From Octopus bimaculoides (Eukaryota), in assembly GCF_001194135.2 (NCBI RefSeq), contig NC_068995.1, positions 4,741,973-4,805,972 on the forward strand: 64,000 nt of DNA, in the 5' to 3' direction. This document shows, piece by piece, positions 7,601 through 53,830 of the stretch (within the stretch, counting starts at the first letter, position 1; every line of letters starts with the position of its first letter). Made by a program: the position numbers and the translations under genes. The notes beneath the pieces are model-generated. The model searched no databases, was not told the DNA's origin, and saw nothing but the letters and a program-made list of their open reading frames with translations.

Positions 7601-7667
7601 AATTAGCCAATCAACGACAGGTTTTCCTGCTAGTATATATGTGTGTGTGTGTATATACATACATGTC

Positions 7668-9990: not shown

Positions 9991-10085
9991 CCTGTTTGTT
10001 TGCAGTCTTTATTGCACCTTTATATTGTTAGTATTCCATAGGTACCAATATATGACAATAAAAGATATCAAACTTTCTGACCAAC

Positions 10086-10821: not shown

Positions 10822-10985
10822 ATATATTGACGTTAGGAAGGGCATCCAGCTGTAGAAACTCTGCCAAATTAGATTGGAGCCTGGTGTAGCCATCCGGTTG
10901 CACCAGTCCTCAGTCAAATCGTCCAACCCATGCTAGCATGGAAAGCGGACGTTAAACGATGATGATGATGATGATGATGATGATA
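10822..10985 (+). mobile_element. RTE LINE 3' tail
   Basis: GGAAGGGCATCCAGCTGTAGAAAC…CCATGCTAGCATGG…(GAT)n. Confidence 0.85.
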
Positions 10986-12236: not shown

Positions 12237-12286
12237 CTGGAATTAGAAGAGAACAAAATATTAGAAAGACACACAGACAGACATAC

Positions 12287-12715
12287 ATCATCATCATCAT
12301 CATCATCGTTTAACGTCCACTTTCCATGCTAGCATGGGTTGGACGATTTGACTGAGGACTGGTGAAGCCGGATGGCAACACCAGGCTCCAGTCTGATTTG
12401 GCAGAGTTTCTACAGCTGGATGCCCTTCCTAACGCCAACCACTCAGAGAGTGTAGTGGGTGCTTTTACGTGTCACCCGCACGAAAACGGCCACGCTCGAA
12501 ATGGTGTCTTTTATGTGCCACCCGCACAAGCCAGTCCAGGGGCACTGGCAACGATCTCGCTCGAAAATCCTACGGGAGCCAGTCAGGCGGTACTGGCAAC
12601 GGCCACGCTCAAAATGGTGCATCTCATGTGCCACCCGCACAAGAACCAGTCCAGGGGCACTGGCAACTATCTTACTTGGCTTGCCGGGTCTTCTCACGCA
12701 CAGCACATCATTTGA
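12287..12715 (-). mobile_element. RTE LINE 3'UTR with internal tandem duplications
   Basis: Same young family; CACCCGCACAAG…CCAGTCCAGGGGCACTGGCAAC is repeated. Confidence 0.85.
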
Positions 12716-12914: not shown

Positions 12915-13270
12915 CCCAGGTTCAGTCCCACTGTGTGGCACCTTGGGCAACTGTCTTCTACTATAGCCTTGGACCAACCAAAGCTTTGTGAGTGGATCTG
13001 GTAGAAGGAAACTGAAAGTAGCCCATCATATATATACATGTGTGTGTGTGTGTGTGTGAGTGTGTGTGTGTATCTGTGTTTGTCCATCCCATCATCGCTT
13101 GACAACTGGTGTTGGTGTGTTTACATCCCTGTAACTTAGGAGTTCGGTAAAAGACACCGATAGAATAAGTACTAGGCTTACAAAAGAATGAGTCCTGGGG
13201 TCGATTTGTTCAACTAAAAGGTGGTGCTCCAGCATGGTCACAGTCAAATGACTGAAACAAGTAAAAGAAT
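12915..13270 (+). mobile_element. SINE family A, near full length
   Basis: Same head, internal (TG)n and tail as the 3105-3495 copy, in the opposite orientation. Confidence 0.85.
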
Positions 13271-14004
13271 AAAACCAACATTTTTAAACAATTCTTTTTT
13301 AATAATCTTGTCTCCGTTTTTCTTTCTTTTTTCTCTTTTTTTTGTCTATAAAATTCTTTCTATTTTATATATATATTTTATATATTCTTTCACATGCAAT
13401 TGTTTTTACTTTGGACTTTATACCCGACCACTTCACAAACCGAGGAAAACAAGCAACAAAACGACCTTAAGATGTTGTGTGCCAGAAAAGACATCTTGCA
13501 CTTCGTTGTGTTTGAAAAGATATACCATATGTCCATTCCTCTTGACGTGTCATACACTCATGCCACCCAAACACACACACACACACACAATCTGTCGCTC
13601 ACCCCTTCCCGATATCTCCTTCCCAACACCCCCTTCCCACCGATGGATGATGATGATGGTGGTGATGATGACTATTTGTTAACTTTGTAACATTTCCTCT
13701 CACCTCTACACCTAACTTTATAGTATTAGATTTTTTTTTTGTCTCATTGTATCGCTCTCTTCACTGCTTTCCCCATCCCTTTCTTTCCATGGCACCTCCT
13801 CGCCTACATCACATGCACACCCATTCACTTTCCACCCCAACACCTCTTATCGTAATCTTGAACAATTCCACCCACAACCCACACACCAAACGCTCCTCCA
13901 GCTCCTCCATGCCATGCTTATCTCCCTCCAAAAATATCTGTTTATACATGCGCACAACACCTCAACGCTCCTGCCTCATCTCGACCTCTCTTCCCAATAC
14001 AAAT

Positions 14005-18845: not shown

Positions 18846-19140
18846 CAGCACATTTCCAAAGGTCTCGGTCAGTAGTCATCGCCTCGGTGAGGCCCAATGT
18901 ACGAAGGTCTTGCCTCACCACCTCAGCCCAGGTCTTCCTGGGCCTACCTCTTCCACTGGTTCCCTCAACTGTTAGGGTGTGGCACTTTTTCACGCAGCTA
19001 TCCTCATCCATTCTCACCACATGTCCATACCAGCGCAATCGTCTCTCTTGCACACCACAACTGATGCTTCTAATGTTCAGCTTTTCTCTCAAGATACTTA
19101 CACTCTGACGGGTATTCACATTGACATTACACATCCAACG
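18846..19140 (-). mobile_element. RTE LINE ORF2 C-terminal fragment
   Basis: …ERRLRWYGHVVRMDEDSCVKKC…GRGRPRKTWAEVVRQDL…DRDLWK; the remainder runs into an N gap. Confidence 0.92.
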
Positions 19141-19480
19141 GAAAGCTCATCATTCCAGTCAGTTGTTTATACGCACAGCCAATGAGCTTCTTTTAGTTTC
19201 CATCTACCAATTCCACTCACAAGGCTCTGGTCAGCCCGAGGCTATAGTATACACTTGCCCAAGGTACCGTGCAGTGGAACTGAACCTGAAACCGTGTTGT
19301 TGAGAATACACACACACAAGCACACACACACACACACATATATACACCCATACATCANNNNNNNNNNNNNNNNNNNNNNNNNNNNNNNNNNNNNNNNNNN
19401 NNNNNNNNNNNNNNNNNNNNNNNNNNNNNNNNNNNNNNNNNNNNNNNNNNNNNNNNNTATATATATATATATATATATGA

Positions 19481-22366: not shown

Positions 22367-22481
22367 CGTACATTCATCTTCGTTCGTGAGAATCTATTCA
22401 GAATTATACATGAATCGTCTGGTACAGGTGCTTTGTTATGCGGTGTAGCAGGAAAAGCTGTCTCTACTATAAAAATCGAAT
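22367..22481 (-). other. Gene X 5'UTR exon (115 nt)
   Basis: tttttag acceptor (confirmed by the spliced copy); CG|GTAAGT donor. Confidence 0.82.
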
Positions 22482-23451
22482 CTAAAAATTTAAAAAAATC
22501 TCTAGTTGAATTTATTTTATTAATCAATAATCGGTCTTTACTTGGCAATTTAACTCAAGGATCGTGGATTTCGAGTGTTAGCACTTACGAAAACTATAAT
22601 TAAATTTAATAATCACCCACAAGTTTACGTTTTTTAAGCAGTTCGTTTTTTCATTCTCCATATTAATTATATAACAAATACATTATCTTATTAATATATC
22701 ATTTTAGCTATTTTCTTTATCACTAACCATCCAGTGATATGGGCGATTACTTATTTACCCAGGAGAGAGATGCAATTACTCATTCGATGTATTCGACTTT
22801 ATTTATCTATTGGGTAGTTAAGGGTTCGGGGTCATTCCAGATCTAATCTTCCACGTTTCATCGTGCGTGTGTAGGCGCAGGTGTCGCAGTGTTGTAAGAA
22901 GTTGCTTTCTAACCAACATGGTTCTGGATTCAAGCCCACCGCGTGGCACAGTGGGCAAATGTCATCTTCTGTAGCCTCGGGACGACAAAAGCCTTCTGAG
23001 TGGATTTGGTACACGGAGGCTGAAAGAAACCCGTCGTATATATGTAGCGTCGGCGTCCCTAATTGTAGCATGTTTTAGCGTAGGGGTCACCAATTGTAAC
23101 AATGTGATTACCAGAATGTAACATGCGTGATGTTGAAGAAAAGAAAGTTGATGTGAATGTGTGTGTGTGTGTTTTTTTGTTGTTTTCCTATGTTGAAGAA
23201 TAAGGACATTGGTCGGAAGTTGTAGATAACATATTTTATTTACCGTTACTTAATATGTATAGCCACACCACGACGAGCAGGCGTGTATAATATAATCGAG
23301 AGTTAATTTTTCCTTGTATAAAGTGTGTATTAATGTTCCTGTCATTGTAGTGGTAAGAAAGAGATAGACAAAATGATGTTTGTTAGAAAGGAAATGAGCT
23401 ATTGAGAAAGTGAAAGACAGTAGAGGGAGTTGTATCATAGCGTTTGCTTAC

Positions 23452-23518
23452 CCTCTTGCTCTGGCCGTCTGTCTCTTGTGGTTTGCTTAGAGATACTTGT
23501 ATTTATTAGAATGCAGAC
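23452..23518 (-). other. Gene X 5'UTR exon (67 nt)
   Basis: ttttctggcag acceptor; G|GTAAGC donor; boundaries confirmed by the spliced copy at 32039-32105. Confidence 0.85.
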
Positions 23519-25289
23519 CTGCCAGAAAAAGAGATGGATAAATTAATGTAGGTCACTTCAACTTATCGTGGGACAGGAAAGTTTATCAGTCAAGTGGAAA
23601 ACACATAAATCTGCGTTCTTCTTTAGACTGAACAATAGGCCATATGGCTAGGGAGAATTTCTAGATTCGATTTCAAATCTTAGGTAGAGCCAAACGAGGT
23701 CTCTACACATATGTGGGTGGGTGGGTGTGTATGCATATATATGTATATATGTTACCGAAATGAGAGGGCCAATCCACATTCCATATCTTGTTTCTTTTTT
23801 CTTCCTTTTCAAAAACAAATTCTAAATTTTAATTCATCAAAAGAAAATCTTTTTCTCATAGAGTAATCAGATCATTCATCAATTAAAAAAAATGCGTCTG
23901 AAACAGCTGTTGTGAACCTTAACCCATTTTTGTTATTTGTGTGTGTGTAATGAATCACTTCCAAGATCCTTAGTTGAGATTCGAAACCAACTCTAAATCT
24001 TCCTACAACTTCCTCTCTATCGTTCTCGATATAAGTGCTTAGAAATTTACGAGTGTCAGTTTTCAAATATAGATAAGTTCTCTTCTTTAACAGACAGTTT
24101 CAAGTCAAACTTTCTGTCAAGGCAAATAACAGACGGAAAAATCTTTTGTTTAGCCTGACCTCATTCTGTTAGGAGAAAATATAAATACAGAACCAAAGTT
24201 ACGTTCTTCATCCTTTCGTTTGGCGCCGGTAAAAGAAGCACCTTCTGCGAAGGGCTACACAACTTTTATACTTTCTATTTGTCAATACAGAGAGGTAAGG
24301 TTCTTTTACCCTTTCTCTCTCTCCTTTCAGCCGTTCCCCTAGGAGTCAAAAAGAAGATGAACTTAACTACTTACAAAATGAATAACAGAACTGCAAATAA
24401 TGTGTACAACAATAACTTGAAGAAGCTGTATGTTACATTGTAACAAAATAAAAGTCATATTAACTATAAATATTTTGCCTCTCATTTATTTCACACATGC
24501 ATACACACACACACTTATATATGCATGCGTGCATAAGAGTTGGTTTGAGGGTTGAAAATGTACCTGACTCTTTACAATGAATCGTACTGGTTTCAACATT
24601 TCTTCTTTTCAGTGGTAGATGACAAAAAGTTTAAAAGAAAGTGAAGGTGTGAGAGAAAAAAAATGGTAAAACATGCTTAATATATCAAATGTTTATAAAA
24701 ATTTCAGTATTCTATAAATTTCACAGTAACAGAAATTAATAAAAGTTGTACATTTAGGTATCAGGAACTTCTTCAGCACAATTCTAATTAAATAAGGAAA
24801 GTTTGTTTATTAAGTAATATAAACCACTGCGGGAAACGTTATAACAACACAACAGAATGAGAAAACTCAGTTTATTCAACCCAATTAAAAACGACCAAGA
24901 ACTAACATTAGTAATAAGATGCCTAAACTCTCTTCTGTATTGTTTTCTTTTTTTTCTGTTTACTTGTTTCAGTCATTTAACTGTGGCCATGCTGGAGCCT
25001 TGAAGGGTTTCGGTCAAACAAATCGACCCTGGGACTTCTTTTTTTAAAAGCCTAGTACTTATTTTATTTGTTTATCTCTCTATCTCTGTTTGTCTGTCTC
25101 TCTCTCTATATATATATATGTACTCAGTTATGCAATGGGTGAAATAGCCTCCATATAAGCTAGTTTTTTTTCTACAGAAGTAGCACCACACTGATGTACT
25201 GTTTTATTCACATCAAATTCCCCCACCCCACTCTTTCAGGAATAAATATGGATAGTGACTGACTTATACCTTGGACAAGAAGACAGGTG

Positions 25290-25560: not shown

Positions 25561-26960
25561 AATAAATAGATTTATTAGCACACCAGGCAAAATGAAGTAC
25601 CAGTTGCGTACTGGGGTTGATCTAATCAACTGGACCCCTTTCCAAAAATGTTGAGCCTTGTGCCTAGAGTAGAAAAAAATAAATAGATTTTTAAAAATAA
25701 CGTTGATCTCCATCTTTAGCACACTGAGTATATGCTGAACAGTATTTCTTTTGTCATTACGTTCCGAGTTCAAATTCCGCCAAGGTCAACTTTGCCTTTT
25801 GGCCTTTCGGGGTCGATAAAATAAGAAGCAGTCGAGCATTGAGATTGGTGTCATTGACTTACTCTCTTCCTTGAACTTGCTGATCTTGTGCAAAATCTTA
25901 AAACCGATATAGATCTCCATATGTCACAGTCAAATCATGATATGTCTCAAATATAACATATCAATTCCTTCTTTGTAAAGGGTAAAATGGTGAACTGGAT
26001 ATTTGATCAGCATTTACTTCACAATCTTTGAAAGGATTGCATCATTTGATAGTAAAAGTGTAAACAACACAAAATAGCGGAGACTTGGTGGTATAGTTCT
26101 TTGCAACTGCATTCGTCGGGTGCTGTCTGCTGTAGTTTCGTGTTAAAGAAAGAATTCTGAGTGGAATTTGGTAGTGAAATGGAAGCTAGTTACATGTTTG
26201 TGTGTGTGTGTGTATGAACTGGTATGTCAAGTCGCATGACTCAATAAAATAAGTGCCATGCAAAAGTTAGTATTTAGGCGGGTTCGAAAAAAATCACTTG
26301 GAGGCATTTTCCCTGCTCGGCTGTAATCCAGTGAATGAATCCGGTAAAGGATTCTCTTCTTTTATAATTCTAATCACATCTAGAATGCAATATAGAGGTG
26401 ATTCTTAACTCAGAGAAACTGATTTGGCACAAGTTTTCTACACAGACATAGTTCTGCATGCTAACAAAAAATCTCACCGGGGGGGGGNNNNNNNNNNNNN
26501 NNNNNNNNNNNNNNNNNNNNNNNNNNNGGGGGGGGGGGGAATTAATCACTGTTACTAATTTAAGAACAAAGTTAACAATTCTGATGAGATGGGTTAACCG
26601 ATTACACCGATCTCAGTACTTGACTGGGACTTTATTTAACCAACCTCAGAAATGTGAAAGGTGGTTTGTGTTGTATTTCCTTCGGAAGACTCCCAGAGAA
26701 AACACGAGTTATATAAATTTAATTATTACATTTATTATTCAATTACATACAAAGAACGCACTCACCCAATGTTCGTTATGAATAAACAAAAGTCATGTCC
26801 GCCATACATATATCAATGACATTTTACTACGACAGTCACACAAAACAACAACAATGAAACAATGAACTCAGACGAAGCACAGTGACACACGGAATGTCAG
26901 ACGAATTACATATCTAACAGTCCATATAACAGGTTGACATGCAGTTTATGGCAGTGAATA

Positions 26961-28410: not shown

Positions 28411-28498
28411 TTAATAGACAACGTCGTTAATCCTCTTTTTCAGCCTAACCTCTTTATTTACGTCAGGAGAGAACGTTGTGTGCGTGAACGACGTGATA

Positions 28499-28803
28499 CG
28501 GTACGAGTCCAAAATATCGGCCTTTTCCGTAAAAAGTGTCTTCGGCGATCTTTACCAAAGATCGGCCTTTTCCGTAACACCCGCACGATCTTCATTACGG
28601 TGTTAGGGTTAGTAGGGTTTTAATGTCAGGGTTAGGGTTAGGGACGGAACTCCCTAACCGATCGCGCTTTCTGTATCTCTTTCGCTTTTAATGACATTGT
28701 TTCTCTGTTTCTCTCCATCACTTATTACGGAAAAGGCCGATCTTTGGTAAAGATCGCCCTAGACAATTTTTACGGAAAAGGCCGATATTTTTGACTCGTA
28801 CCG
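28499..28803. mobile_element. Palindromic MITE with about 70-bp TIRs, TA flanks and a central TTAGGG tract
   Basis: TA|CGGTACGAGTCCAAAATATCGGCCTTTTCCGTAAAAA … TTTTTACGGAAAAGGCCGATATTTTTGACTCGTACCG|TA; two subterminal ATCGGCCTTTTCCGTAA repeats per arm. Confidence 0.88.
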
Positions 28804-30133
28804 TAATATCAAAAAAAATATTCTAAGGGGAACAACTTAGTCTCTCTTATTAATTCAATCTTCGGCATTTGGTTTTGTGGATAAAAAAGATGCTATCTTT
28901 ATAAATATAATTCTTATTTTCATAAAATTTTTAAATAGTTATTTGAAACTAGTTTATCTATAGTAAATTAAATATTATTTTTATAGATTAAGCATTTTTT
29001 GGTTTCAAATTTTCAGTTCTTTAAATTCGAAGTTTTTGCTAAATTCTAAGCCCATCATTGATGGCCAATTTTTACAATAGAATGTCTTATATAATTTTTT
29101 GTTTATTCCACGTCAGACCATGCCTTCCCCGACAGATAGGCCTTTTGAACAGGATAAATTTGTGCAATTTTTCGCAAAATAAAACTTCGTTGAGGTGTTT
29201 TTTCCTTTTAAAATCATTTACATGTCTGTTCGACCGATTCATATGACTTTATTCACTAGAATTTATTAAAACTTCAGAAGTTCTTACAACTTTGGTCGTC
29301 GTAATGCTTAGCTTTCGTTTATTTAATAAAAATTCCCCTTCCTAATGATTTTGCATCCATTCTGTGATAGCTATCATGCAGAAAATGCCAGCTTTCAAAT
29401 CCTGTTTTGTGATTAGGTAAAATTGATTAAACTTTAAACCTCAATAACATTTTAGTGCAATTTTTCGGGAACAAATAACTAACAAAATCGGATTTAATGT
29501 GGAAAATAATTTCAATACACCAAATTTGAAAATTTTGACGTAATTTTAAAATTTCACAGTATGTGACAGCAACAGGAAAGACCTTAAAATATAGACAGTT
29601 ATAGGGACGTTATACACACACACACGCGCCGAAGGAGATAATCTATTAGTGACATCAGATCTTATGAATAAGATGAAAACGACCTGTTGTCTCTAAAGTG
29701 TCCAAAATTTGATAAAATTGTTCTCAGAAGGGATATAAAGAATTTTGTTTTTAATAACTCATTCTTGAATTGCCCCCTTTCTCTATTGGGGTACTAAACA
29801 TTGTGTACAAAAGGTATAAAAATTCGGTACAACCCTACGCATGTCCTACGTTGGGAATCACGGGTTTAAGGTTAGGGTCTGGGGTTAGGGCTATGCAGGT
29901 GCGCCGGGACATCTGTATTTAAGTAGTACCAAATTTCTACGTGTTTTTCCTCATAAGAACTCCGAAAAACGTGAAACGTGGAGAAATTGGGTGAGATGGG
30001 GGTATAATTGAAATTTTGAAATGTCGATTTTTGCCAAGGGTATCGGGTGGTGTCGAGTTGGAGAAAAAGAGGTACCCCAATAGAAAGTTTAAACATTTAC
30101 GTGTTCAAATAGGTAAGCAATATAGATTTTGAA

Positions 30134-30274: not shown

Positions 30275-31969
30275 GATTTTGAACTCATACAAATGCGCGA
30301 TTCATATTAATTGTAAATTTCGAGTTTCATTTTGTAGAAAAAAGCACTTTCAGTTACAAAAAGAAAAGAAAAAAAGTGAAACACTTTCATTTCACTTTTT
30401 GTCACAGTAAACCTCATTTTCGAGAAATTTCTCTGAAAGACATCTTTGCAGAAAGGTGAGTAGATTGATTACATATTTCTTTTATTATTCTGAAATTTTG
30501 AAATGCCAATTTTCTTTCACGGATCCGGAATCTCCGGAGCCGAAAACGTGGGTGTTGTAAAAAAAAAAAAAAAACGGAAGTGGGTGTGCTGTTTCTAAGA
30601 AAACAAGGGTCTGTTTTTTTTTTAGAAATAAAGAGAGAGAGAGAGAGAGTGCTCTTAAGTCATTCTTCAAATTTTCCAGGCAAAGAAAGGTCGCATGCAA
30701 CGCGTGTCTCATCGAAAACCAGAAACACTGGAAGCGGTAATAATTTAAAGGTATTTTAGAGATAATTTATTTTAACATAATTTTCTGTTAGTAAATGTTT
30801 TTTTTTCTTACACAAACACGCAAGATGCGATAATGGCAAGTTTTGGAATTTAGGGTATGGAGTAAATTATTAAAAGAAAAAAAATTATTGGATAATCGTA
30901 TATACTACACGGGCACAAATTGTACCGATAACCAAGTGAAAAGATGCTTTCCTGAGGCTAACTAATATTAACATTGTCTTTGTATAAGACTGCCACATTA
31001 TGTTGGCAAATAAACTTTCCTAATCGTATTAATTCCATTGTGAAAACCAAGCGTTAAAAAAATCGAAAAACAGTGAAAAGTTTTGGAATTAAAGGAGTAG
31101 AGGGGAATAGTCATTTTTTTTTCAATAGGGTAATCGTATTTATTCTATTATGCTGATCGAAAAAAATTATCAAAAATAAAAAAAAGTTGCGAAGGGTTTT
31201 AGCACGTGAGAAATTAATTTCTCTTTCAAAGGGAGATTGGCATTATCTTTTTAATTTAATGTATCTAGACATTACATTGTCACAAAACTGCTAAAACTTT
31301 ACTAACATGATCGATAAATGACTAAACCTGGATTTAATTGTATTTTATACAACCTTAGCTATCAATAGATAAATGCAAACTTTTATGTGTACATCTTTAT
31401 AAATATTTCTCATGTGCGATGACTACAACAAACGCGTGCGCGCGCAAGATTCTTTGGGTTTTAACCATAGCTGAAGTCCGCCGCATGTTTTTCTTTTGGA
31501 ATTGATAAAGATTTGTAAAAGTAACTTTTTGCGCACACACATTCTCTCTCTCTCTCTCTCTCTAGGTCAGGAGTCGCCAAATTTTTTCGACCATCGATCC
31601 CGTTTAACCACGTCTTCGTCATCGACCCCTTTTTAGCCACTTCATCTTCTGCACCGACCATTCTTGTGAACGTGTTTGGTAGACGGAAACTGAAAGAAGC
31701 CTATATATATATGTGTGTGTTTGTGTATTATGTCTGTGTTTTTCCCTCCTCTATCACTTGACAACCGATGTTGGTGTTTACGTCCCCCGTAATTTAGCGG
31801 TTCGACGAAAGAAACCGATAGAATAAGTACTAGGCTTACAAAAAATAAGCCTTGGAGTCGATTTGGTCGACTAAAGGCGGTGCTCCAACATGGCCGCAAT
31901 CAAAATGACTTGAAACAAGTAAAAGAAAAAAAATGCTGGCTTAACCCTAACCCCAACCCNNNNNNNNNN

Positions 31970-32105
31970 AATCGTCTGGTACAGGTGCTTTGTTATGCGG
32001 TGTAGCAGGAAAAGCTGTCCCTACTATAAAAATCGAATCCTCTTGCTCTGGCCGTCTGTCTCTTGTGGTTTGCTTAGAGATACTTGTATTTATTAGAATG
32101 CAGAC
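31970..32105 (-). other. Intronless (spliced) copy of gene X exons 23452-23518 and 22413-22481
   Basis: 31970-32038 = 22413-22481 (one T>C difference); 32039-32105 = 23452-23518; the junctions fall exactly at the GT/AG boundaries of the genomic exons; abuts an N gap at 31960-31969. Confidence 0.92.
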
Positions 32106-32230
32106 CTGTTATTTCTAGCACATGTCACGGCTGCCTGTTGCCCTCCTTGTTTCTTTCTCGCTTTGCCATATTGATGTTTTTCAATATAGTTCACCACATA
32201 GACATTGCTTGTATTTAAGCAAAAAATTCG
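32106..32230 (-). other. Gene X putative first (non-coding) exon; 5' boundary approximate
   Basis: Ends in …AACAG at 32106, joined directly to a copy of exon 23452-23518; stop codons in the frame of the downstream exons. Confidence 0.55.
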
Positions 32231-32647
32231 GATTGTCAGTATCGTAAACAATGATTTTTTTTAAAAAACAAATCTGAAAAATGTAATTTTAACTAATCGG
32301 TCGCCTCTCGATGCGGTCCGTTTTTTTGAAAAAAGGTTGCCTGAGCCTGGTGTAAGTTGTGAATAGGAACTTAACTGCTATTTCTAGTACATCGAGCAAC
32401 CAGTTAGTGGATCAATATAAAGGGGAGTAACTCTGTTATTACAGTTTCCATGAGCTTTCCCAGAATGCATCATTCTTTTCGGCGCGAAACTTGAGTTCGT
32501 CTTCCGATCAGTTTAAATGGAAGACATCAAACAACGATACATCGTATAAAATATCTCAAGCATCACGGAAAATAGAGATAATCTGAGTGACGTAGGAGTA
32601 AATCATCAGCTTATAACACAGATATTTATTTATATTTGTGTTTATTA
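32230..32647. promoter_or_regulatory. Putative bidirectional promoter of DONSON and gene X, with an E2F-like site GGCGCGAAA at 32481-32489
   Basis: About 400 bp separate two divergent first exons; locally CpG-richer; TTTCGCGCC E2F consensus on the - strand. TSS positions unknown. Confidence 0.5.
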
Positions 32648-32944
32648 ATGGCAGAGACATCGCCGAATTGGAAGAAACCTTCGGAGGTGATGAAGTTGAG
32701 AAGGAAGAAAAAACGGTTATTAGAAAATGAGAATTCTTCATTAAGGAAAAGATTAAAGCTGGATGATTTATCTAACAGAAACGACCAGATTTCACCTTGT
32801 GCCAGTCTTTCTTCGTTCTATCAACATAAGAATCCTTTTAGAAGAAATCATTCCACACCAGTTCGAACCATTTCTTCGACAACGGAAGAAATTCGACCGA
32901 AAACAAATTCTATTCGACTTTTCGATACTTTAGATACTTCTGAG
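32648..32944 (+). CDS. DONSON: DONSON exon 1 (MAETSPNWKKPSEVMKLRRKKKRLL...DTSE)
   Basis: ATG at 32648; open frame to the GAG|GTAAGG donor; 99 codons, phase 0; basic NLS-like N-terminus; joins in frame to conserved downstream exons. Confidence 0.85.
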
Positions 32945-35723: not shown

Positions 35724-35918
35724 GTGTCCGATGTTTCAAATGTAACTAAAAAGGAAGATTTTTGTCAAGATATACCTTTTGATTGGAGTTTAAAACTGAA
35801 GATGCGGTTTATTTCTTTGTCTTTTGATTGGTGCAAGAATTTAAGGAGCTCCGAAGAAGCTGAAGGTGTGAGCAATTATTTAGCAAGTCAACTTCCTGAA
35901 ACGACGCCCTCTGCAAAT
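35724..35918 (+). CDS. DONSON: DONSON exon 3 (…IPFDWSLKLKMRFISLSFDWCKNLRSSEEAEGV…)
   Basis: Matches the DONSON PxDWS(I/L)K…F.W…EEA.G motif; ttttgcag acceptor; AAT|GTTAGT donor; 65 codons. Confidence 0.93.
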
Positions 35919-36786: not shown

Positions 36787-36899
36787 TTGAAGAAACTTCC
36801 AGAGAATTCCTGGCGATCCCATTTTCACAGAGAGACTTTGTATTGGGTTCACCCAAATCTTCCCTGGGTGAAATTATTCCCAAGAATTACTCACGAAAA
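36787..36899 (+). CDS. DONSON: DONSON exon 4 (…TLYWVHPNLPWVKLFPRI…)
   Basis: YWVHPNLPWVKLFPRI aligns with vertebrate YWLHPALSWLPLFPRI; ttttag acceptor; AA|GTAAGA donor; phase 0/2. Confidence 0.93.
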
Positions 36900-38945: not shown

Positions 38946-39369
38946 AAAGAGCATACATGGAGAAAGATAGAATGTTTACATATTTTGAAGAGTGTTAAAC
39001 TAAAGACACCAACATTTGTTGACATTCTTGCACCTTCAAGGAGGAGTGGAATAAAATTTACATTACTTACGAAAGCAGGTAGGGGTTAACAACAGACCTC
39101 AGTCTATACTTCTCTAACCCATTGTGGTGTGGCAATGTGCTGGTGGCATGAAAAAAGCAGCCAGTACACTTTGTAGAGTGATTGGCATTACGGAAGGGCA
39201 TCCAGCTATAGAAACCATGCCAAAGCAGATATTGGGGCTCGATGTGGTCCTGCTGCTTGTCAGGTCTTTTTAAACCATCCAAGTCATGCCAGCATTAAAA
39301 AAAAGGGTGTTAAATGATGATGTCTGTGTGTGTGCTCATTTTTCAATAGTTTCTTCTGTCTGTCTCCAG

Positions 39370-39551
39370 GTCGGAGAGTTTCCTGTCGGCGTTCGGTCAG
39401 TTACGGTCGGGCTATTGCCCTTACCTGTACGTCTGTACCCACCAGTTCACTGTGCTCTTCAAAAGGATGAAGACTTCAAAGAATGACTCCACCCTCTCAG
39501 CAGTTCTTACTCCGACAACTCGAGGACTCAGGGAAGCTCTCAAAAAGGAAG
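39370..39551 (+). CDS. DONSON: DONSON exon 6 (SESFLSAFGQLRSGYCPYLYVCTHQFTVLF…PTTRGLREALKKEG)
   Basis: CPY.YVCT.QFTVLF and PTTRGLREA are DONSON hallmark motifs; ctccag acceptor; G|GTGTGT donor; phase 2/1. Confidence 0.96.
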
Positions 39552-40529
39552 GTGTGTTCATTGTTTCATATCCCCTTATTGCCAAAGTGTGTGATATTAT
39601 CATCATCATCATATGAGTTGTTTGTTACCAGCATCTCGTGTCTGTATGTTTGTGTTTGTCAGTAAGTATTCAATTAATGAATTGTAATCTCTCTCTCCCC
39701 CCCCTTTCTGTCTGTCTATGCATATTTCTGTATGTGCAGACATGCTTGTTTCAAGTCCCAAAACGGTACTGTTTCCACAGTGGAGAATGCCTCCAGTTAG
39801 CCATTCGAAATCACCAGCGTCCAAAGAGTTTTTTGTTCAATTGTCTTGTCCTATGATGGTAGATAATCAGAATAGATGTTGACTGATGGCAATAGGCCTC
39901 GTGGAAGTGACGACGAAATAAGCAACAACGATGGCAAATGTGCTGTGCTGCAAACTTATCCAACCCACATTGATAGAGAGAAGCCAAATGTTAAATCATT
40001 GGTGATAGTGACGACTTACCACTTGTCCTTTGCAGTTAACCTCCTTGGATATTACACTCATGAGTCCTAGGACTCAGAGCGGATGGGGCAATTTGCCTGG
40101 TTTCCATGGTGTATAAAATGGCAAGAGATCACCACAGAATGGGACCCTGGTCTGTTGAGTTAGTCATTTACAGCTGAGTGGACTGAGGCTATGTGAAAGG
40201 AAGTGCTTTGTTAAAGAACACACAGCACCGTCCGGTCTGGGAATTGAAACCACGATCATAATATGTGGTTTCAACACTCTAAATCGGCCACACACCTTGA
40301 TAGATGGTGATGATCATTTAATGTCTGTTGTCCATGCTGGCATGGGTTGGGTGTTTTGGCCAGCTGGAGGGGGGGGTGTTGCACCAGGCTCCAGTTCTGA
40401 TTTTACATATTCTAAAACTTTTATAAAATATTTTCCTTTAATTTAAAACAATTTTTTTTTTTTTTTTTTCGAAAATATTTAAATTTTAAAACCATCTTTT
40501 CTAAGTTAATTTTATTTATTCATTGGCAG

Positions 40530-42035: not shown

Positions 42036-42299
42036 CATCAGTTCACATAATTCCTCAGTTGATGATGATGGCGATGACGACGGTGATATTGATGGTGAAG
42101 CTGATTTATTTGAAGAGCAAGAGAACATAGTACCGAGTTCCGATCCTGAAGAGTTGAAACGGAATTTCCAGTCAAATGGAGAAATAGAGGAGGAGGAAGA
42201 AGATGGCTTCATAGCAGACGAGGGCGCTGCTGTATGGTTGGAAAGTATTGGGCTTGATAAGAAAAACTTCCCTTCATTGAATCCAAACAAAGTCAGACT
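42036..42299 (+). CDS. DONSON: DONSON exon 8 (acidic tract…AAVWLESIGLDKKNFPSLNPNKVRL)
   Basis: WLESIG aligns with vertebrate WLEEMG after an acidic run; tgtag acceptor; ends at the U12-type donor CT|GTATCCTTT; phase 2/2. Confidence 0.9.
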
Positions 42300-42653
42300 G
42301 TATCCTTTTCCTTATGCTTTACTCAGGGCTAATGTGAACTGTGATGTCATCACTGCTTTAACGAGGTTTTTAAAAATTTGTTTGTATGAAGGTTGTCCAC
42401 TGGGCCATTGCGCCTCCACAATATATATATATATATATAGGCACGCATGGGGTTGTATGGTTCAGAAGTTTGTTTCCCTACCATGTTGCCTCTCTCTCTC
42501 TCAGTGTGGGCAGGTGGAAGTTTTATGATACACTATTTACTCAGCTGAGCAATCACTTCATCACCCCCTCCCCTTCTTATATGTCCTTGTCATGCCTTTC
42601 CCTCATCGCCCTCCAGCTTCTTCACATTTTTTTCCCTTAATAAAAGATTTCAG
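42300..42653 (+). other. DONSON: U12-type (minor spliceosome) GT-AG intron, DONSON intron 8
   Basis: 5' end GTATCCTTTT; branch sequence TTCCCTTAAT at 42632-42641, 12 nt before the end of the CAG; both boundaries are independently fixed by protein homology. Confidence 0.9.
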
Positions 42654-42852
42654 TCATCGTGAAGGTTTTAAGCAGATTGACTGCCGCCCTGAATCGGTGA
42701 TAGTGCTAGACCAAGACGTTGACGTACAAGCACTGTTTAATTTCCTCCTCAACTGGAGAGCCTGCATCGCGGCTGTTGGTCCACAACATGGCATCCCGCC
42801 AACCATTTTATCACCAAATGCTTTCAAAGGGGCTACCTTGAAATCACTGAAG
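42654..42852 (+). CDS. DONSON: DONSON exon 9 (HREGFKQIDCRPESVIV…GPQHGIPPTILSPNAFKGATLKSLK)
   Basis: Aligns with vertebrate MDHRPESVVLV…[34 protein letters not shown] donor; phase 2/0. Confidence 0.96.
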
Positions 42853-43748
42853 GTAATTGGAAGTTTTTTTTTTTCTTTTTTTTCCATCCCATGTTAGTTT
42901 TGTCTAAGCAGAACTGTGATCAAGGGTGTTAATACTGTGGAACCACATGATCAAATGTCTCCTTCCTTTTCTAATAATATAAGGTGTGATTTGGTTGTTA
43001 GTTCTTTGCTGGTAAATCAACAATGTTTTTTTTTTTTATCTAACTTTTAGTTGAGAGGAAAGACAGTTTCCATCGGCTCTTACTCTGAGGCTGATGGAAA
43101 GAGTGGGGCAAGAAGGAGGGAGTTATCTCCCAACTGGGGGCCTCACCTGAATGCCTGCAAGGTGAGGTATTAGGCTGGTTGCCAGATTAACCATTTGGCA
43201 TTTAAACTGGTCTATATATTGTACCTCCTTACTGCACATACTGGCTAGATCTAGTCTCTCACACCTACCCTACAATGTCATTCTAAAAAAAAAAAAAACA
43301 TATTTAAATCTCAAAGCTACAAGGTTATGCATGATTAATTCAAGACTGAATTAATGAATTGAATAAATAATCTGAATGTTAAAGGGTTAGACTGATCATA
43401 TTCAGCCAAAATATTCTACCTGTTCTGTGTTCCAGCTGGTCAGATCCAGCCTCTCACACCTGCCTTAAAAATATTTTAAAAATAAACCATTAACTTTTTT
43501 TTTTTTTTTTTGTCTTAAAGGATTTCAGTTATTGTGGGGGTTTTAAATGGATTCACTGCCATCCTAATATACCATACCATGTGAGAAAAAGGGACATGTT
43601 TAATATTGTATGTCAGAAAATAAATGAGCACACTATTGTAGTCCAAGGTATACTATGTCAGAAAATTGGACGTATTATATATTGTAGTGCTAGGCATACC
43701 TCACTTTGGCAGCAATTCTTTTAGTGTTCCTTAATTCTTCCACCCCAG

Positions 43749-44075
43749 GTAAAACACAGCACAGCCTTACAGAAGGACCGACAGAAAATCAGCGTGCTGG
43801 AGATGGCTGGACCGATCTTGCCCACACATGTCCAGAGGCTAGTCAAGTTGATCTGCCAGACACAGGACCAAAACTTCAGCTTATCTCTTCACACTCATGA
43901 ACCAACATCAGCTCTTAACGTTCGAATGACGGATGCTTCCTTGAATCAGCCTCCCAGCAAATGCTCAAATAACAAAGTCGGTTCTGCTTTTTCTTCTACT
44001 TCTCTCGTTTCGGCATTTAAACATACTGTTTCAGACGTCACTTGTACTCCAGATGGTTTTGTCTGGTCGAGATGA
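43749..44075 (+). CDS. DONSON: DONSON exon 10, terminal (…LEMAGPILPTHV…HTHEPTSALN…FVWSR*)
   Basis: LE..GPI.P and HEPT..N motifs plus a terminal W, as in vertebrate DONSON; cccag acceptor; TGA at 44073-44075. Total CDS 1845 nt = 614 aa plus stop. Confidence 0.93.
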   Translation, partial: VKHSTALQKDRQKISVLEMAGPILPTHVQRLVKLICQTQDQNFSLSLHTHEPTSALNVRMTDASLNQPPSKCSNNKVGSAFSSTSLVSAFKHTVSDVTCTPDGFVWSR

Positions 44076-46417: not shown

Positions 46418-47580
46418 CTATAAGTTTGGGCTTATTTGCACAAGACCTTGTAGACAATGTTTTTTTGTTTTCCCACGTGGAATGGACGTGAAAAGATTGT
46501 CTTTACTTCCTACTCTAGAGCAGCCTACGTAGAGTTGCCCATGGAAGAAGCAGGACTCTGCCAAATGCAGTCCAGCTAATGACAGTGTTTGCCCCCTGGG
46601 ACTTGTTGATGGACATGGCAAAACTGATGCGTAGGGGGAATTGAAGTCGCAGAAATTGGAAAGGGATGTCAGCATCAGATGGGGTAAGTGGAATCCTTGG
46701 TATGAAGACATCCTCTCCTTTTCCACATCCAGAAATGATGGTGGCTTTGATGACGTGCTGCATGGCAGTCTTAATGACAAGACGCGTAACCTTGCAGAGT
46801 TTTAGAAGACTTAGATTCCTCAGAAGCATAACTGGAGTTCCAACTTTCACTGGCAATATGAGGGAGCAGTCCTTGTGGTTCCAGTGAATTAAGAAATTCA
46901 ACAGGATAGTTGACTGCCTGATCAGGGTCAGGGATCAAATCAATTGATTTGTAGACATGAAGCCTACCAGGAATGACTTGCACCAGTTGATGGTGTTAAC
47001 CATGCTGTTTTTTGGAGCTAAAATAGCTCTTTCGCACAGCCAGTTAAGGTCCTGGTAGTTTTCATGCAGACGGGAAAAGACTTTTCCTTTTAGGTCTTCG
47101 AGGGTGTCGACATTTGTTGAAATCGAGGACAACGTAGTTTCTCCATCATCACTGAGAAGTGATTTTCCATCCCCCAGTGATGAAAGGTTTGCTGCGAATT
47201 CTGCTGCCTGTTGGTTGCTATGCAGTCTGGCTCGCATATTCATTGTAAGGGTCAGCGTTGTTATGTTTTGCCATAACAGACGATTTGAGGCACGCATTAA
47301 CTTCGTCTGCCCTGGTTCCTTTGAGAATAACTGGTAGAGTCTGCCGAAAGTCACCAGAAAGTAGAATCGTAAGCCCCCCCCCCATTGTAGTCGAGCAATC
47401 TCTGATATCTTGTAGTGTAGCGTTGAGGGCTTCAAGAGTATGCCTATGTGCCATGGTGCATTCGTCCCACACGATGAGTTGGCACTTCCGTAAAAGCAGG
47501 CCCTTGTCCGACATTTTGCTTATGTTGCAAGAGGGCTTGTCACATTTCGCCGATAATTTGATTTCACATGAGTCCACATC
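46418..47580 (-). mobile_element. Helitron PIF1-type helicase, C-terminal remnant
   Basis: LIVWDECTMAH, GDFRQTLPVI, LCERAILAP.N, LKVGTPVMLLRNL, FPLRISFAMSINKSQG and LYVGCSRV motifs; frameshifted. Confidence 0.95.
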
Positions 47581-47830
47581 CCTTCCATGATGTTTGTGTG
47601 TACAGAGCGATCATTGGGATCCACAAAGGTGACACTGTGGTTGACAATGGAATGGTTTGGTAGGCTGTTATATGCTCTCCAGGAATCTGTGATAATCTTA
47701 GTTCCTGGCAAAACATGGCGGGTAACAATGTTTATGCACTTCTATTTTCCACAGAAACTAAGACACGTCTCAGATTTCCCCGTTCAACCATTCCAAGAAC
47801 CCAAGCACATCCAAGACTTCTTCAAAGCAA
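47580..47830 (-). mobile_element. Merlin/IS1595-like transposase fragment
   Basis: RHVLPGTKIITDSWRAYNSL…VNHSVTFVDP…HTNIMEGMW. Confidence 0.9.
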
Positions 47831-49049: not shown

Positions 49050-50345
49050 TCTCTGTGGCTTACAAAGTTCAGCAGCATCCTGCATTAATGTTTGGAAGAG
49101 GTTTACATGCCGTGTGTGCATCTCATTTGGTGTTGGATTTGCCACCGCAGGTTTTCGCTGTCGTTTGTGTGAGCTCTGGTGAGAGGATCCACGGCAATGT
49201 AAATGCGATTGACATTGAGATGCTTGAAACTTTAAGCTCCAAGACTATGTTTTCCAGCCGTCACATATTGTTGTTGTTCCAGGTTTAATATGCTGCAAAA
49301 TTAATGGTTGTGGCCCTATCCCGCTTGTTATTTAGCAATGCAATTAGTACATTTTGTTGGCTGTCACGGCATATGCCTCCAAACTCACACTGTCCTTCAG
49401 ATCTTTGATATTTTGTTTTCCTGAATTTCAACTCATCGATTTCCACTAATTCCTGGGATGCCAATGTCTGTATGTAGTTTTTTTGTCTCTACTGACCACT
49501 GACAGACTACGAATGATATTCTCTTATGGTTTCTGTGGATGTTGCTAACACGTTCTCATCAGTCACTGTCGGCCAATGAAAGGCTTGCTACGTGCACGGT
49601 TTCATTATGCAGCAACTGGTAGGGACGGGGGTGTTTACTACTCCACAAGTGGACCATTATAGGCGGTTACAGGATTATTTTTCGGTGGTAGTAAATAGAA
49701 TAATACCGAAAGATGTCGCAATCTTTACGGAAGTGTCGCCTCTATTTCGATACTTATCTCCATTGCTAGGGGTTACGTTGAAAAGATTCGTTAGTGTAAC
49801 GTCGTAGGTACTTGAGATTCATAGCTATTTTGGTCGCTGGTGTATAATTTTCCTTTGTGGTAATAATGAGACGTAAGGAGTAATTCCATTTAGTTGCTGT
49901 TGTTTACGGAAATCTTTTTTTAACAATGTTATCTAATGCATTAGCCCTTTTCGGTGATTTCGAAAGTTATGTCCCCAGTCTATTTATTATGGACTGGGTA
50001 GAAGAAAAAATAGCTTGCATTCTTTCATCGCAGAGCATGATTGTGAAAGAACTAAATTTAGGATATGGGCACAACAATGAATAAAGGTCGCACATTCATA
50101 TTTCTTTCTTACTTTTGCCTGTAACCCATTTAATTGTCCTGCCGTTGTAGCGGCACCATCATATTAAGTGTAGCACTTCCAGTTAACCATTTTTTCATTT
50201 CATACAAATTAACCTGAAATTGTCTCGTAAATTTCTTGTAACTTCACAAATTAGGTGAATTCGGTGTTGGTCTCCCACTGTTTATAATTGTTTTCCATCG
50301 AAGTCTCTTTTCGAAAGACTATTTCTCAAAATATCGTTTCTAACA
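49050..50345 (-). mobile_element. hAT (ZMYM1/Tip100-like) transposase remnant
   Basis: The - strand encodes YDGAATTAGQLNGLQAKVRKKYECATFIHCCAHILNLVL…KRANAL…ATKWN, containing the hAT D…CxxH…(R/K)W signature; many stops. Confidence 0.85.
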
Positions 50346-50434
50346 CGCACTTCACTCAATTCGAGTGACCACAGGCTGGAGAGTGAGAAAGGGAGTGTGT
50401 CGCTGGGTGCTTGGGATGTGCTGCCGTCACGTGT

Positions 50435-51330
50435 TTAGCAACTCCTACAAGGTACTGCTTGAAGAAAGAGAATTCGTTCCAATAACTTCCTGAAGATTTC
50501 GTCCTTAAATTCATAATGCCACATGAATTCAATCAGATGCATCTGCAGTAAACTTCGGACTGTTCCATTTTCTCTTTTGTTGAGATTCTTTACATGCTTC
50601 CATAAGCATTCTATGTGGATGGTTGTGGCAAATGTTACCGGATCAACAAAATTTATAGAATGGTTTACAGTCAAATGTCTATATCCTAGCTGATTAAGCG
50701 TATTATACGAACGCGAGAGGTCAGAAATTATAGTTGTACCAGGCAGTATATGGTCTTATATAATACCTAAAAGAGTGTCCGCAGACCGGTCTTCCACTGC
50801 CACCGAAACACATCTTTTTGTATCCCTTTCNNNNNNNNNNNNNNNNNNNNNNNNNNNNNNNNNNNNNNNNNNNNNNNNNNNNNNNNNNNNNNNNNNNNNN
50901 NNNNNNNNNNNNNNNNNNNNNNNNNNNNNNAATTATATAGCGGGTGTACATACTTCTTGCACATAACTGTTATAATCCACAGCTGTATTGGGGCTCATCC
51001 CCAGTTCGTTTTCACAATAGCGGACTGTGGTCAGTCCCCTGACCCAACAGTACAAGAATAATGACTACCGCCCACAGAGGAAGTGTGCTACCTTCCAGCC
51101 AAGTTTCCTTTCCAATAGAAACTTTAACACAACAACCTCTGACAGTACACCGCCACATAATACGATTACTCAAGGATTTTGTCTTCATTAAGTGCCCATT
51201 TACACATTTTTTTGTGGACAGTATAATACCCTTCTCTGTTAAGTACTCCACCGCATCCTCTTGCGTTTTTATTACACTAAACAACTTGCATAGACTAGTC
51301 ATTTTCACAATGTAATGTAAAATACAAACA
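50435..51330 (-). mobile_element. Merlin transposase remnant, copy 1
   Basis: N-terminal zinc ribbon (C.NGH…WRC…C..KVSI.KETW) and C-terminal VNHSINFVDP…IECLWKHVK…EFMW; contains an N gap. Confidence 0.9.
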
Positions 51331-52029: not shown

Positions 52030-53075
52030 TTTTTTCATGTCTGCGCTGCCACATCAATCTGCAGGTACCTCACCATCATTTGTTACCCTGTTTTAAACAC
52101 GCCCAAGTACTTCCTCTCATCGGTCACTGTCGGCCAATGAAAGGCTTGCTACGTGCACGGTTTCATTGTGCAGCAACTGGTAGGGACGGGGGTGTTTACT
52201 ACTCCACAAGTGGACCATTATAGGCGGTTACAGGATTATTTTTCGGTGGTAGTAAATAGAATAATACCAAAAGATGTTGCAATCTTTACGGAAGTGTCGC
52301 CTCTAATTCGATACTTATCTCCATTGCTAGTGGTTACGTTGAAAAGATTCGTTAGTGTAACGTCGTAGGTACTTGAGATTCATAGCTATTTTGGTCGCTG
52401 GTGTATAATTTTCCTTTGTGGTAATAATGAGACGTAAGGAGTAATTCCATTTAGTTGCTGTTGTTTACGGAAATCTTTTTTTAACAATGTTATCTAATGC
52501 ATTAGCCCTTTTTGGTGATTTCGTAAGTTATGTCCCCAGTCCATTTATTATGGACTGGGTAGAAAAAAATATCTTGCANNNNNNNNNNNNNNNNNNNNNN
52601 NNNNNNNNNNNNNNNNNNNNNNNNNNNNNNNNNNNNNNNNNNNNNNNNNNNNNNNNNNNNNNNNNNNNNNNNNNNNNNNNNNNNNNNNNNNNNNNNNNNN
52701 NNNNNNNNNNNNNNNNNNNNNNNNNNNNNNNNNNNNNNNNNNNNNNNNNNNNNNNNNNNNNNNNNNNNNNNNNNNNNNNNNNNNNNNNNNNNNNNNNNNN
52801 NNNNNNNNNNNNNNNNNNNNNNNTTCATATTTCTTTCTTACTTTTGCCTGTAACCCATTTAATTGTCCTGCCGTTGTAGCGGCACCATCATATTAAGTGT
52901 AGCACTTCCAGTTAACCATTTTTTCATTTCATACAAATTAACCTGAAATTGTCTCGTAAATTTCTTGTAACTTCGCAAATTAGGTGAATTCGGTGTTGGT
53001 CTCCCACTGTTTATAATTGTTTTCCATCGAAGTCTCTTTTCGAAAGACTATTTCTCAAAATATCGTTTCTAATAC
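52030..53075 (-). mobile_element. hAT remnant, second copy
   Basis: Colinear duplicate of about 49553-50345. Confidence 0.85.
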
Positions 53076-53158
53076 ACACTTCACTCAATTCGAATGACTA
53101 CAGGCTGGAGAGCGAGAAAGCGAGTGTGTCGGTGGGTGCTTGGGATGTGATGTCACGT

Positions 53159-53830
53159 TTAGCAACTCCTACAAGGGACTGCTTGAAGAAAGAGAATTCG
53201 TTCCAATAACTTCCTGAAGATTTCGTCCTTAAATTCATAACGCCACATGAATTCAATCAGATGCGTCTGCAGTAAACTTCGGGCTGTTCCATGTTCTCTT
53301 TTGTTGAGATTCTTTACATGCTTCCATAAGCATTCTATGTGGTTGGTTGTGGCAAATGTTACCGGATCAACAAAATTTATAGAATGATTTACAGTCAAAT
53401 GTCTATATCCTAGCTGATTGAGCGTATTATGCGAACGCCAGAGGTCAGAAATTATAGTTGTACCAGGCAATATACGGTCTTGTATAATACATAAGAGTGT
53501 CTGCAGACTGGTCTTCCACTGCCACAAAAACACATCTTTTTGTATCCCTTTCCAAAGCACCAAACACCCACTGCATTTTAACCTGATGGCCAACATTATA
53601 ATTTCTTGCATCTATCTCCACAATTCAGTTTGGCCCTCCCAGCTTAAAGTTTTGTGCAACATAATATTCTGCACATATATCACAGCAAAAAGTTCTCCAA
53701 TCTGAGACTGCTATATTCGCTATGCGACATTCCTGGGATATTCCCTTTGCTAAATCTTCTTTTGCCCAATAATACAATATATCGATCATTTGTTCACATT
53801 TCAATTTACTATTTTCTAAAATTGTTCCTT
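53159..53830 (-). mobile_element. Merlin transposase remnant, copy 2
   Basis: EID…QWVFGALERDTKRC…ILPGTTIISDLWRSH…VNHSINFVDP…NHIECLW. Confidence 0.92.

What the first reader, a model, noticed from the sequence alone, without database searches (positions are those of the whole stretch)
31970..32230. Precisely spliced mRNA sequence sitting in the genome next to its own promoter
Seen: 136 bp immediately right of a 10-N gap are exon 22413-22481 plus exon 23452-23518 of gene X, fused exactly at their GT/AG boundaries. They join, again at a perfect …CAG| boundary, an exon (32106 onward) with no intron-flanked copy elsewhere in the window. One T>C difference separates copy from source. Inference, three explanations: (a) the assembly was gap-filled with cDNA/RNA reads (most parsimonious given the adjacent gap); (b) a very young retrocopy of the 5'UTR inserted at the DONSON promoter; (c) reverse-transcription-mediated intron loss on one allele. 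A young RTE family is present locally as a possible RT source.
Basis: partly seen in the sequence, partly recalled or inferred. Interest (0 to 1): 0.75.

Follow-up and report, generated by a model that had tools for sequence, protein, structure and literature searches.

The report
Spliced exon copy at contig end
A 136-base intron-free copy of two 5' exons really does sit beside a gap, joined to the gene's first exon, but it is most likely an assembly join made from intron-less reads, not a true structure at this place in the genome.

Summary
Window 31970-32038 copies 22413-22481 with one T>C change at 32020. Window 32039-32105 copies 23452-23518 exactly. The gene lies on the minus strand, and there both fusion points are canonical GT..AG splice junctions. 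A third junction joins the copy to a unique exon whose 3' end is at 32106 (..AACAG|).

The copy is the first 136 bases of the contig right of a 10-N gap. It stops in mid-exon: 46 nt of exon C are missing. Its first 50 bases match the source exactly and base 51 is the only variant. A de Bruijn contig built with k = 51 would end in just this way. So the assembler, not biology, probably set the left limit. The layout also fits a published scaffolding rule that slots a short contig into a larger estimated gap.

The intron-containing source exons lie 8.6-9.6 kb downstream on the same scaffold. I conclude this is a contig-end chimera built from intron-less reads. Those reads came either from cDNA carried over into the genomic libraries or from a young retrocopy elsewhere; I cannot tell which. 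No independent sequence of this species was reachable, so a real local RNA-templated event is unlikely but not excluded. The piece still documents the exon A-B-C splicing of an unidentified gene that lies head-to-head with DONSON.

The parts
31960..31969 (.). 10-N scaffold gap, the smallest of 11 gaps in the window
   Evidence: N runs of 10 to 999 bases, two of them exactly 100
31970..32038 (-). Intron-less copy of the 5' 69 nt of exon C. It is the first sequence of the contig right of the gap and is cut in mid-exon.
   Evidence: 69/70 identity to 22413-22482; the first 50 nt are exact
32020..32020 (-). The only difference from the source: C here against T at 22463. On the sense (minus) strand this is A>G in the context TAG[A>G]GAC.
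32039..32105 (-). Intron-less copy of exon B (67 nt), identical to the source
   Evidence: 70/70 with 23452-23521, which includes 3 nt of shared CAG
32106..32260 (-). Exon A, the unique upstream (first?) exon of gene X. Its 3' end is defined at 32106 (..AACAG|). Its 5' end is not defined; 32260 is only a working limit.
   Evidence: no other copy in the window; the join falls exactly at exon B's acceptor boundary; no pyrimidine tract lies upstream, so this is an exon end and not an intron end
23452..23518 (-). Source exon B, flanked by acceptor AG 23520-23519 and donor GT 23451-23450
22482..23451 (-). Intron 2 of gene X (970 nt, GT..AG), absent from the copy
22367..22481 (-). Source exon C (115 nt). 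It holds a candidate start codon, ATG at 22377-22375, just before the donor GT at 22366-22365. Only 22413-22481 is represented in the copy.
31704..31938 (+). SINE-like repeat ending in an A-run, inside intron 1 of gene X. It forms the right end of the contig left of the gap.
   Evidence: six or more copies in the window at 70-81% identity
31939..31959 (.). Unique tail of the left contig, ending in the degenerate telomere-like CCCTAA run cttaaccctaaccccaaccc. It is a plausible reason for the contig break.
32648..32962 (+). Putative first coding exon of DONSON: an ORF starting MAETSPNWKK, which reads on into the intron. It is divergent from gene X and lies 540 bp from the 3' end of exon A.
   Evidence: one search gives the ORF. 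It has no homologue, so this is inference. Conserved DONSON exons on the same strand are at 35769-35882, 36802-36897, 39356-39586, 42214-42300, 42655-42855 and 43746-43922.

Best explanation
The fused sequence is a contig-end chimera, not the true local genome.

Exon A at 32106 and rightward is the native upstream exon of a minus-strand gene (gene X) that lies head-to-head with DONSON. In the animal it should be followed by a GT intron of roughly 8.5 kb that leads to exon B at 23518. The start of that intron was not assembled. The neighbouring contig ends in a SINE followed by a G/C-rich telomere-like run.

The read set also held intron-less molecules of gene X, reading A-B-C and carrying one variant base. 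Their unique k-mers formed a short contig. That contig ends at the last k-mer that still contains the variant. This accounts for the first 50 nt matching the source exon exactly, and for the cut in mid-exon. Reads spanning the 67-nt exon B tied this short contig to exon A. The scaffolder then slotted it into the small estimated gap between exon A and the next intron contig, leaving the minimal 10-N gap.

The intron-less reads were RNA-derived. They came either from cDNA carried over into the genomic libraries or from a very young processed retrocopy elsewhere in the genome. I rate the two as about equally likely.

Shown: the identities, the splice boundaries, the position at the contig end, and the 50-nt terminal identity. 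Inferred: the type of assembler and k = 51, the scaffolding step, and the source of the reads.
For: 1. Exact exon-exon fusion at three canonical minus-strand junctions shows the template was spliced RNA.
2. The copy is the very start of a contig next to a gap and stops in mid-exon, 46 nt before exon C's donor.
3. The contig's terminal exact match to the source is exactly 50 nt, and base 51 is the only variant. This is the expected end of a unique-extension de Bruijn contig with k = 51.
4. The Meraculous paper describes these rules: contigs end at forked k-mers; a short contig is accepted into a larger estimated gap; overlapping ('negative') gaps between contigs are closed by reads that span both contig ends, called splints (PMC3158087).
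5. The 70-nt identical stretch at exon B is longer than k, so at least one of its two copies must have been joined by such reads.
6. The intron-containing exons B and C are present on the same strand of the same scaffold, 8.6-9.6 kb downstream. The assembly therefore holds two mutually exclusive continuations of exon A.
7. As assembled, exon A has lost its donor site. The fusion reads CAG|GTCTGC and is followed by no usable donor before the gap. That would break normal 5' splicing.
8. The window is a short-read draft with 11 gaps, many at homopolymers or microsatellites.
Against: - No reads and no second assembly of this species could be reached, so there is no direct test.
- The assembler and its k are not known for this window.
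- Exact repeats longer than 50 nt occur elsewhere in the window, up to 181 nt. The k = 51 reading therefore rests on this one clean contig end, plus a weak excess of 49-50 nt matches.
- A spliced path can enter a genomic k-mer graph only if it is well covered. That requires either substantial cDNA contamination or real genomic DNA.
- A 10-N gap could also mean that the left contig truly adjoins the copy.
Confidence: 0.7

Rival explanations
1. Deliberate finishing with transcripts. After assembly, a gap-filling or scaffolding step that used RNA-seq reads or assembled transcripts extended the contig end from exon A into the mRNA sequence.
For: The spliced sequence is directly next to a gap. Only RNA-derived sequence can carry these junctions.
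Against: The fill closes nothing. It stops in mid-exon, exactly 50 nt past the variant, whereas a transcript would run on through exon C and later exons. No other exon-exon piece occurs in the window. I found no record that a transcript-based finishing step was used, but the species and pipeline are unidentified.
Confidence: 0.1
2. A real, local RNA-templated event on one haplotype. A partial cDNA of gene X recombined with the gene at exon A. This could be reverse-transcriptase-mediated loss of introns 1 and 2, or cDNA-templated break repair. The diploid assembly then mixed this haplotype with the intron-containing one.
For: The fusion to the native exon A is precise, as cDNA gene conversion would give. 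The variant at 32020 could mark the second haplotype. LINE reverse-transcriptase fragments belonging to a family with 96-99% identical copies lie in the window. The same k-mer signature would arise from a heterozygous allele.
Against: Intron loss is far rarer than retrocopy formation. It is usually 3'-biased, whereas here the two 5'-most introns are the ones missing. The allele would lack a splice donor after exon A. Both versions sit in one scaffold. Continuity to the left is hidden by the gap.
Confidence: 0.1
3. A true processed retrocopy of gene X mRNA, including its own copy of exon A, inserted upstream of DONSON. The native exon A would then lie elsewhere.
For: The sequence is intron-less with exact junctions and is about 99% identical to the source. 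Young LINEs are nearby.
Against: No second copy of exon A exists between exon B and this site, and the only gap in that interval is 40 N. The copy lies on the same strand and in the position expected for the native first exon. No poly(T) run on the plus strand and no target-site duplication is visible next to the gap. With a gap of about 10 bases there is no room for the rest of the mRNA.
Confidence: 0.04

Closest known systems
De Bruijn-graph contig-end chimeras, and false 'processed pseudogenes' caused by cDNA in genomic libraries
   Same: The exon-exon junction sequence lies at a contig end beside a gap. The terminal identity to another locus has length k-1. A short foreign contig appears to have been slotted into a scaffold gap, following the rule described for Meraculous (PMC3158087).
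   Different: Neither the assembler and its k nor the presence of cDNA reads could be verified here. The source of the reads remains open.
Processed pseudogene / retrocopy (LINE-mediated retroposition of an mRNA)
   Same: The introns are removed precisely. The copy is almost identical to its parent. Reverse-transcriptase-bearing LINE fragments are in the neighbourhood.
   Different: No poly(A) tail or target-site duplication is visible. Only 5' exons are seen. The copy is fused in register to the single native first exon of its own parent gene, not placed at an unrelated site.
Reverse-transcriptase-mediated intron loss (cDNA gene conversion, the Fink model)
   Same: Two adjacent introns are deleted exactly, and the flanking exon stays in its native place.
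   Different: The intron-containing version is still present downstream on the same scaffold. The 5'-most introns are the ones affected. The fused version lacks a donor for further splicing.

Membership tests
Processed retrocopy | Exons joined exactly at splice junctions, with introns absent | tested here: met
   both junctions are exact, with canonical GT..AG in the source.
Processed retrocopy | Poly(A) tail at the 3' end of the copy | tested here: inconclusive
   The copy is cut by the gap in mid-exon. There is no T-run on the plus strand in the 20 nt left of the gap.
Processed retrocopy | Target-site duplications flanking the insert | not testable with these tools
   Neither end of an insert is visible. 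The left end is in the gap, and the right end is continuous with exon A and the promoter.
Processed retrocopy | Inserted at a site independent of the parental exons | tested here: not met
   The copy is fused in register to the only copy of exon A. It is on the same strand as its source exons and 8.6 kb upstream of them.
RT-mediated intron loss | Precise deletion of introns at the native locus | tested here: met
   The A-B-C junctions are exact.
RT-mediated intron loss | The intron-containing version is replaced, not kept alongside on the same chromosome | tested here: not met
   Exons B and C with their introns remain at 22367-23520 on the same scaffold. This could be met only if two haplotypes were merged.
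RT-mediated intron loss | Continuity from the fused exons into the rest of the gene | not testable with these tools
   The copy ends at the 10-N gap.
Assembly chimera at a contig end | Lies at a contig end next to a gap and contradicts another part of the same scaffold | tested here: met
   it starts at the first base after the gap, and a second, intron-containing continuation of the gene lies downstream.
Assembly chimera at a contig end | The contig ends where its k-mers stop being unique (terminal identity of k-1) | tested here: inconclusive
   The terminal exact match is 50 nt and base 51 is the variant, which fits k = 51. But k is unknown, and longer exact repeats exist elsewhere in the window.
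Assembly chimera at a contig end | No genomic molecule spans the join | not testable with these tools
   No reads or independent assembly of the species were found.

The most novel reading that the evidence does not exclude
The structure is real and local. One haplotype of the sequenced animal carries a very recent RNA-templated rewrite of the 5' end of gene X, with cDNA recombined into the gene at exon A and introns 1 and 2 removed. This would be an intron-loss or cDNA-repair event caught while still polymorphic, next to a young LINE family.
Probability: 0.08. Interest if true: 0.6.

Novelty: not a real feature. Interest (0 to 1): 0.2.

Why it matters
If this is an artefact, as I judge, it matters in two practical ways.

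First, gene models at this locus should not use 31970-32105 as genomic sequence. The 136 bases occupy the place of the true start of intron 1, and they would create a false duplicated 5' UTR.

Second, the piece is still useful evidence. It shows that an exon ending at 32106 is spliced to 23518-23452 and then to 22481 onward. That places the 5' end of an unannotated minus-strand gene about 0.5 kb from the putative start of DONSON.

If similar pieces are frequent in this assembly, they would point to cDNA carry-over in the genomic libraries, or to a population of young retrocopies. Either would be worth knowing genome-wide.

If the structure were real, it would be a rare polymorphic intron-loss event.

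Tried and rejected
**Independent sequence of the same species**
- The DONSON exon-1 ORF found no homologue and no exact record.
- Three ORFs across the fused region had no exact record.
- A six-frame translation of 31970-32560 gave no hit even at E = 10.
- The nearest related contig is Logan SRR11869394. It is only 80% identical in nucleotides and covers a distant DONSON exon. Its accession appears in no held paper.

**RNA editing as the cause of the variant**
- The change is A>G on the sense strand. However, the 5' neighbour is G, which ADAR disfavours (from general knowledge).
- The modelled 5' UTR shows only short local helices and no long duplex.
- One site cannot decide the matter, so I dropped this as evidence.

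**Identity of gene X**
- In the chiton Liolophura, DONSON has a head-to-head MAPEG (MGST3-like) neighbour and a SON-like gene downstream.
- tblastn with MGST3, a sequence recalled from memory, found the chiton exons but nothing credible in the window.
- No convincing minus-strand coding ORF lies in 1-22400. Gene X stays unidentified.

**Assembler parameters**
- The first octopus genome paper is not held.
- Other cephalopod genome papers show that Meraculous plus HiRise assemblies with roughly 5-kb contigs exist for several species, without giving k.
- The species of the window is not established beyond mollusc. I suspect a cephalopod.

**Global test of k = 51**
- Exact repeats of up to 181 nt exist in the window, so 51-mer uniqueness does not hold across the final sequence.

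**Other**
- Pfam gave no hit for the LINE C-terminal ORFs, so 'RTE' is unconfirmed.
- A literature search on retrocopies in octopus returned nothing specific.

Full report
**What is there**

Directly after a 10-N run (31960-31969), bases 31970-32039 match 22413-22482 at 69 of 70 positions. Bases 32039-32108 match 23452-23521 at 70 of 70 (sequence read). The BLAST E-values are about 1e-30. In a whole-window self-comparison, these are the only short high-identity duplicates that are not interspersed repeats or microsatellites. The single difference is T at 22463 against C at 32020.

**Anatomy**

The splice signals are on the minus strand.
- Exon B (23518-23452) is preceded by ..CTCTTTTTCTGGCAG| and followed by |GTAAGC.
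- Intron 2 runs from 23451 to 22482. It is 970 nt long and ends ..AAATTTTTAG|.
- Exon C starts at 22481 and runs to 22367 (GTACG|GTAAGT). An ATG at 22377-22375 could be the start codon.
- The copy reads ..GAAATAACAG|GTCTGC...GAGCAAGAGG|ATTCGATT... It is therefore exon A fused to exon B, fused in turn to the first 69 nt of exon C.

Exon A (32106 rightward) ends in CAG, the usual last three bases of an exon. There is no pyrimidine tract before that CAG, so this is an exon end and not an intron end. Nothing else in the window resembles 32109-32700.

On the plus strand, an ORF starting at 32648 is followed by clearly conserved DONSON exons at 35769-35882, 36802-36897, 39356-39586, 42214-42300, 42655-42855 and 43746-43922. 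The gene that owns exons A-C is thus head-to-head with DONSON, about 0.5 kb from it. The first DONSON exon is inferred only, because it has no detectable homologue.

The contig left of the gap ends in a SINE-like repeat (31704-31938). This is followed by 21 unique bases that end in a degenerate CCCTAA run.

**What limits the copy**

The copy is the very beginning of a contig. It stops 46 nt before the end of exon C, so its extent is not an exon boundary or any other biological landmark. Its first 50 bases are an exact match to the source, and base 51 is the only variant. In other words, the first 51-mer of the contig is the last 51-mer that still differs from the source locus. A de Bruijn assembler that keeps only uniquely extendable k-mers would end a contig at exactly this point if k = 51.

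The Meraculous paper describes the relevant rules (PMC3158087):
- contigs stop at forked k-mers;
- overlapping ('negative') gaps are closed by reads that span both contig ends;
- when a contig end has two candidate neighbours, a short contig is accepted if the larger estimated gap can hold it.

This gives a complete technical account of the layout. A short contig made of the spliced-specific k-mers was tied to exon A by reads spanning the 67-nt exon B. It was then slotted between exon A and the next intron contig, leaving a minimal gap.

There are caveats. I do not know the assembler or its k. Exact repeats of up to 181 nt occur elsewhere in the window. The k = 51 reading therefore rests on this one contig end and a weak excess of 49-50 nt matches.

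**Why the fused structure is probably not the local genome**

The scaffold holds two incompatible continuations of exon A. One is the fused B'-C' copy. The other, 8.6-9.6 kb downstream on the same strand, is the intron-flanked exons B and C. As assembled, exon A has no splice donor: the fusion reads CAG|GTCTGC and no donor follows before the gap. The real first stretch of intron 1 is missing from the assembly, and the neighbouring contig ends in a sequence that short reads assemble poorly. All of this fits a displaced intron start replaced by a foreign piece.

**Where the intron-less reads came from**

The template was certainly spliced RNA. Two sources fit about equally well: cDNA carried over into the genomic libraries, or a very young processed retrocopy elsewhere whose exon A is identical to the native one. 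I could not separate them.

The variant is A>G on the sense strand, which is the direction of A-to-I editing. However, it has a G on its 5' side and no long duplex around it, so it says little.

A deliberate transcript-based gap fill is less likely, because the piece closes nothing and stops in mid-exon.

A real heterozygous RNA-templated event, meaning intron loss or cDNA-templated repair, would give the same assembly picture and cannot be excluded. Such events are much rarer than retrocopies, and this one would remove the 5'-most introns and the donor.

A retrocopy carrying its own exon A, inserted upstream of DONSON, is unlikely. There is no second exon A between exon B and this site, no poly(A) tail or target-site duplication, and no room in a 10-N gap for the rest of the mRNA.

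**Attempts to obtain independent evidence**

None succeeded. Homology and exact look-ups for ORFs of the region found nothing. The nearest related contig is only 80% identical and lies elsewhere in DONSON.

Synteny in a chiton shows an MGST3-like gene head-to-head with DONSON and a SON-like gene downstream. No such exons are detectable in the window, so gene X remains unnamed.

The species is a mollusc by its DONSON relatives. I suspect a cephalopod draft assembly of the Meraculous plus HiRise type, because of the gap pattern and contig sizes, but this is not established. The point matters: for a species from which no RNA was ever sequenced, the cDNA carry-over option would fall away.

**Comparison with known things, and verdict**

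The piece works like a fragment of a processed transcript copy. It fails the tests for a locally inserted retrocopy, because it is not at an independent site and shows no tail or duplications. It also fails one test for intron loss, because the intron-containing version persists on the same scaffold. It meets the tests I could run for a contig-end chimera.

I rate it as most likely not a real local feature (confidence about 0.7) and of low interest. It has two practical by-products. It documents the A-B-C splicing and the divergent arrangement with DONSON. It also flags a possible source of intron-less reads that deserves a genome-wide check.

The read-level tests that would settle the matter are listed under decisive next steps.

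Noticed in passing
window 46421-47610 (-): Several frameshifted ORFs match the PIF1-like helicase family (PF05970, E = 6e-25; also the Pif1 2B domain). This looks like a decayed Helitron-type element downstream of DONSON.
   Followed up: partly
window 49554-50830 and 52115-53552: A near-duplicate of about 1.3 kb (95-97% identical), broken by gaps at 50831-50930 and 52579-52823. It carries ORFs with an ISXO2-like transposase domain (53162-53611, PF12762; paralogue at 50438-50755). It could be a tandem duplicate of a domesticated or transposon gene, or uncollapsed haplotypes.
   Followed up: partly
window 9677-10027 and 18847-19146 (-); 7657-7887, 8839-9066, 10827-10979, 12281-12520: Two LINE reverse-transcriptase C-terminal ORFs each start right at a gap. 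Four tail fragments are 96-99% identical to each other. This is a young, poorly assembled LINE family. The clade (RTE?) is not confirmed, and there was no Pfam hit.
   Followed up: partly
window 31704-31938, 13051-13274, 59050-59218, 3089-3325, 2619-2856, 259-476, 24948-25073: A SINE-like family of about 240 bp with an A-rich tail, at 70-81% identity between copies. One copy forms the contig end left of the finding.
   Followed up: partly
L002 (Liolophura sinensis CM072720.1) 2545-28475: In this chiton, DONSON is flanked head-to-head by an MGST3-like MAPEG gene and downstream by a SON-like gene (G-patch, dsRBD). The 'downstream neighbour of SON' arrangement is therefore conserved in a mollusc. 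No MAPEG exon was found in the window.
   Followed up: partly
window 1295-1303, 26479-26539: Gaps sit at homopolymers: C9 before the gap at 1304, and G9 and G12 on either side of the gap at 26488-26527. Other gaps sit at (TA)n runs. This is typical short-read dropout and supports a technical cause for contig breaks in this window.
   Followed up: no
window 2-158: An exact tandem repeat with a 75-bp period (2-83 = 77-158, 100% identical) at the very start of the window.
   Followed up: no
window 28497-28577 / 28725-28805: An inverted repeat of 81 bp at 95% identity, with arms about 150 bp apart, inside intron 1 of gene X. It may be the termini of a small DNA transposon.
   Followed up: no
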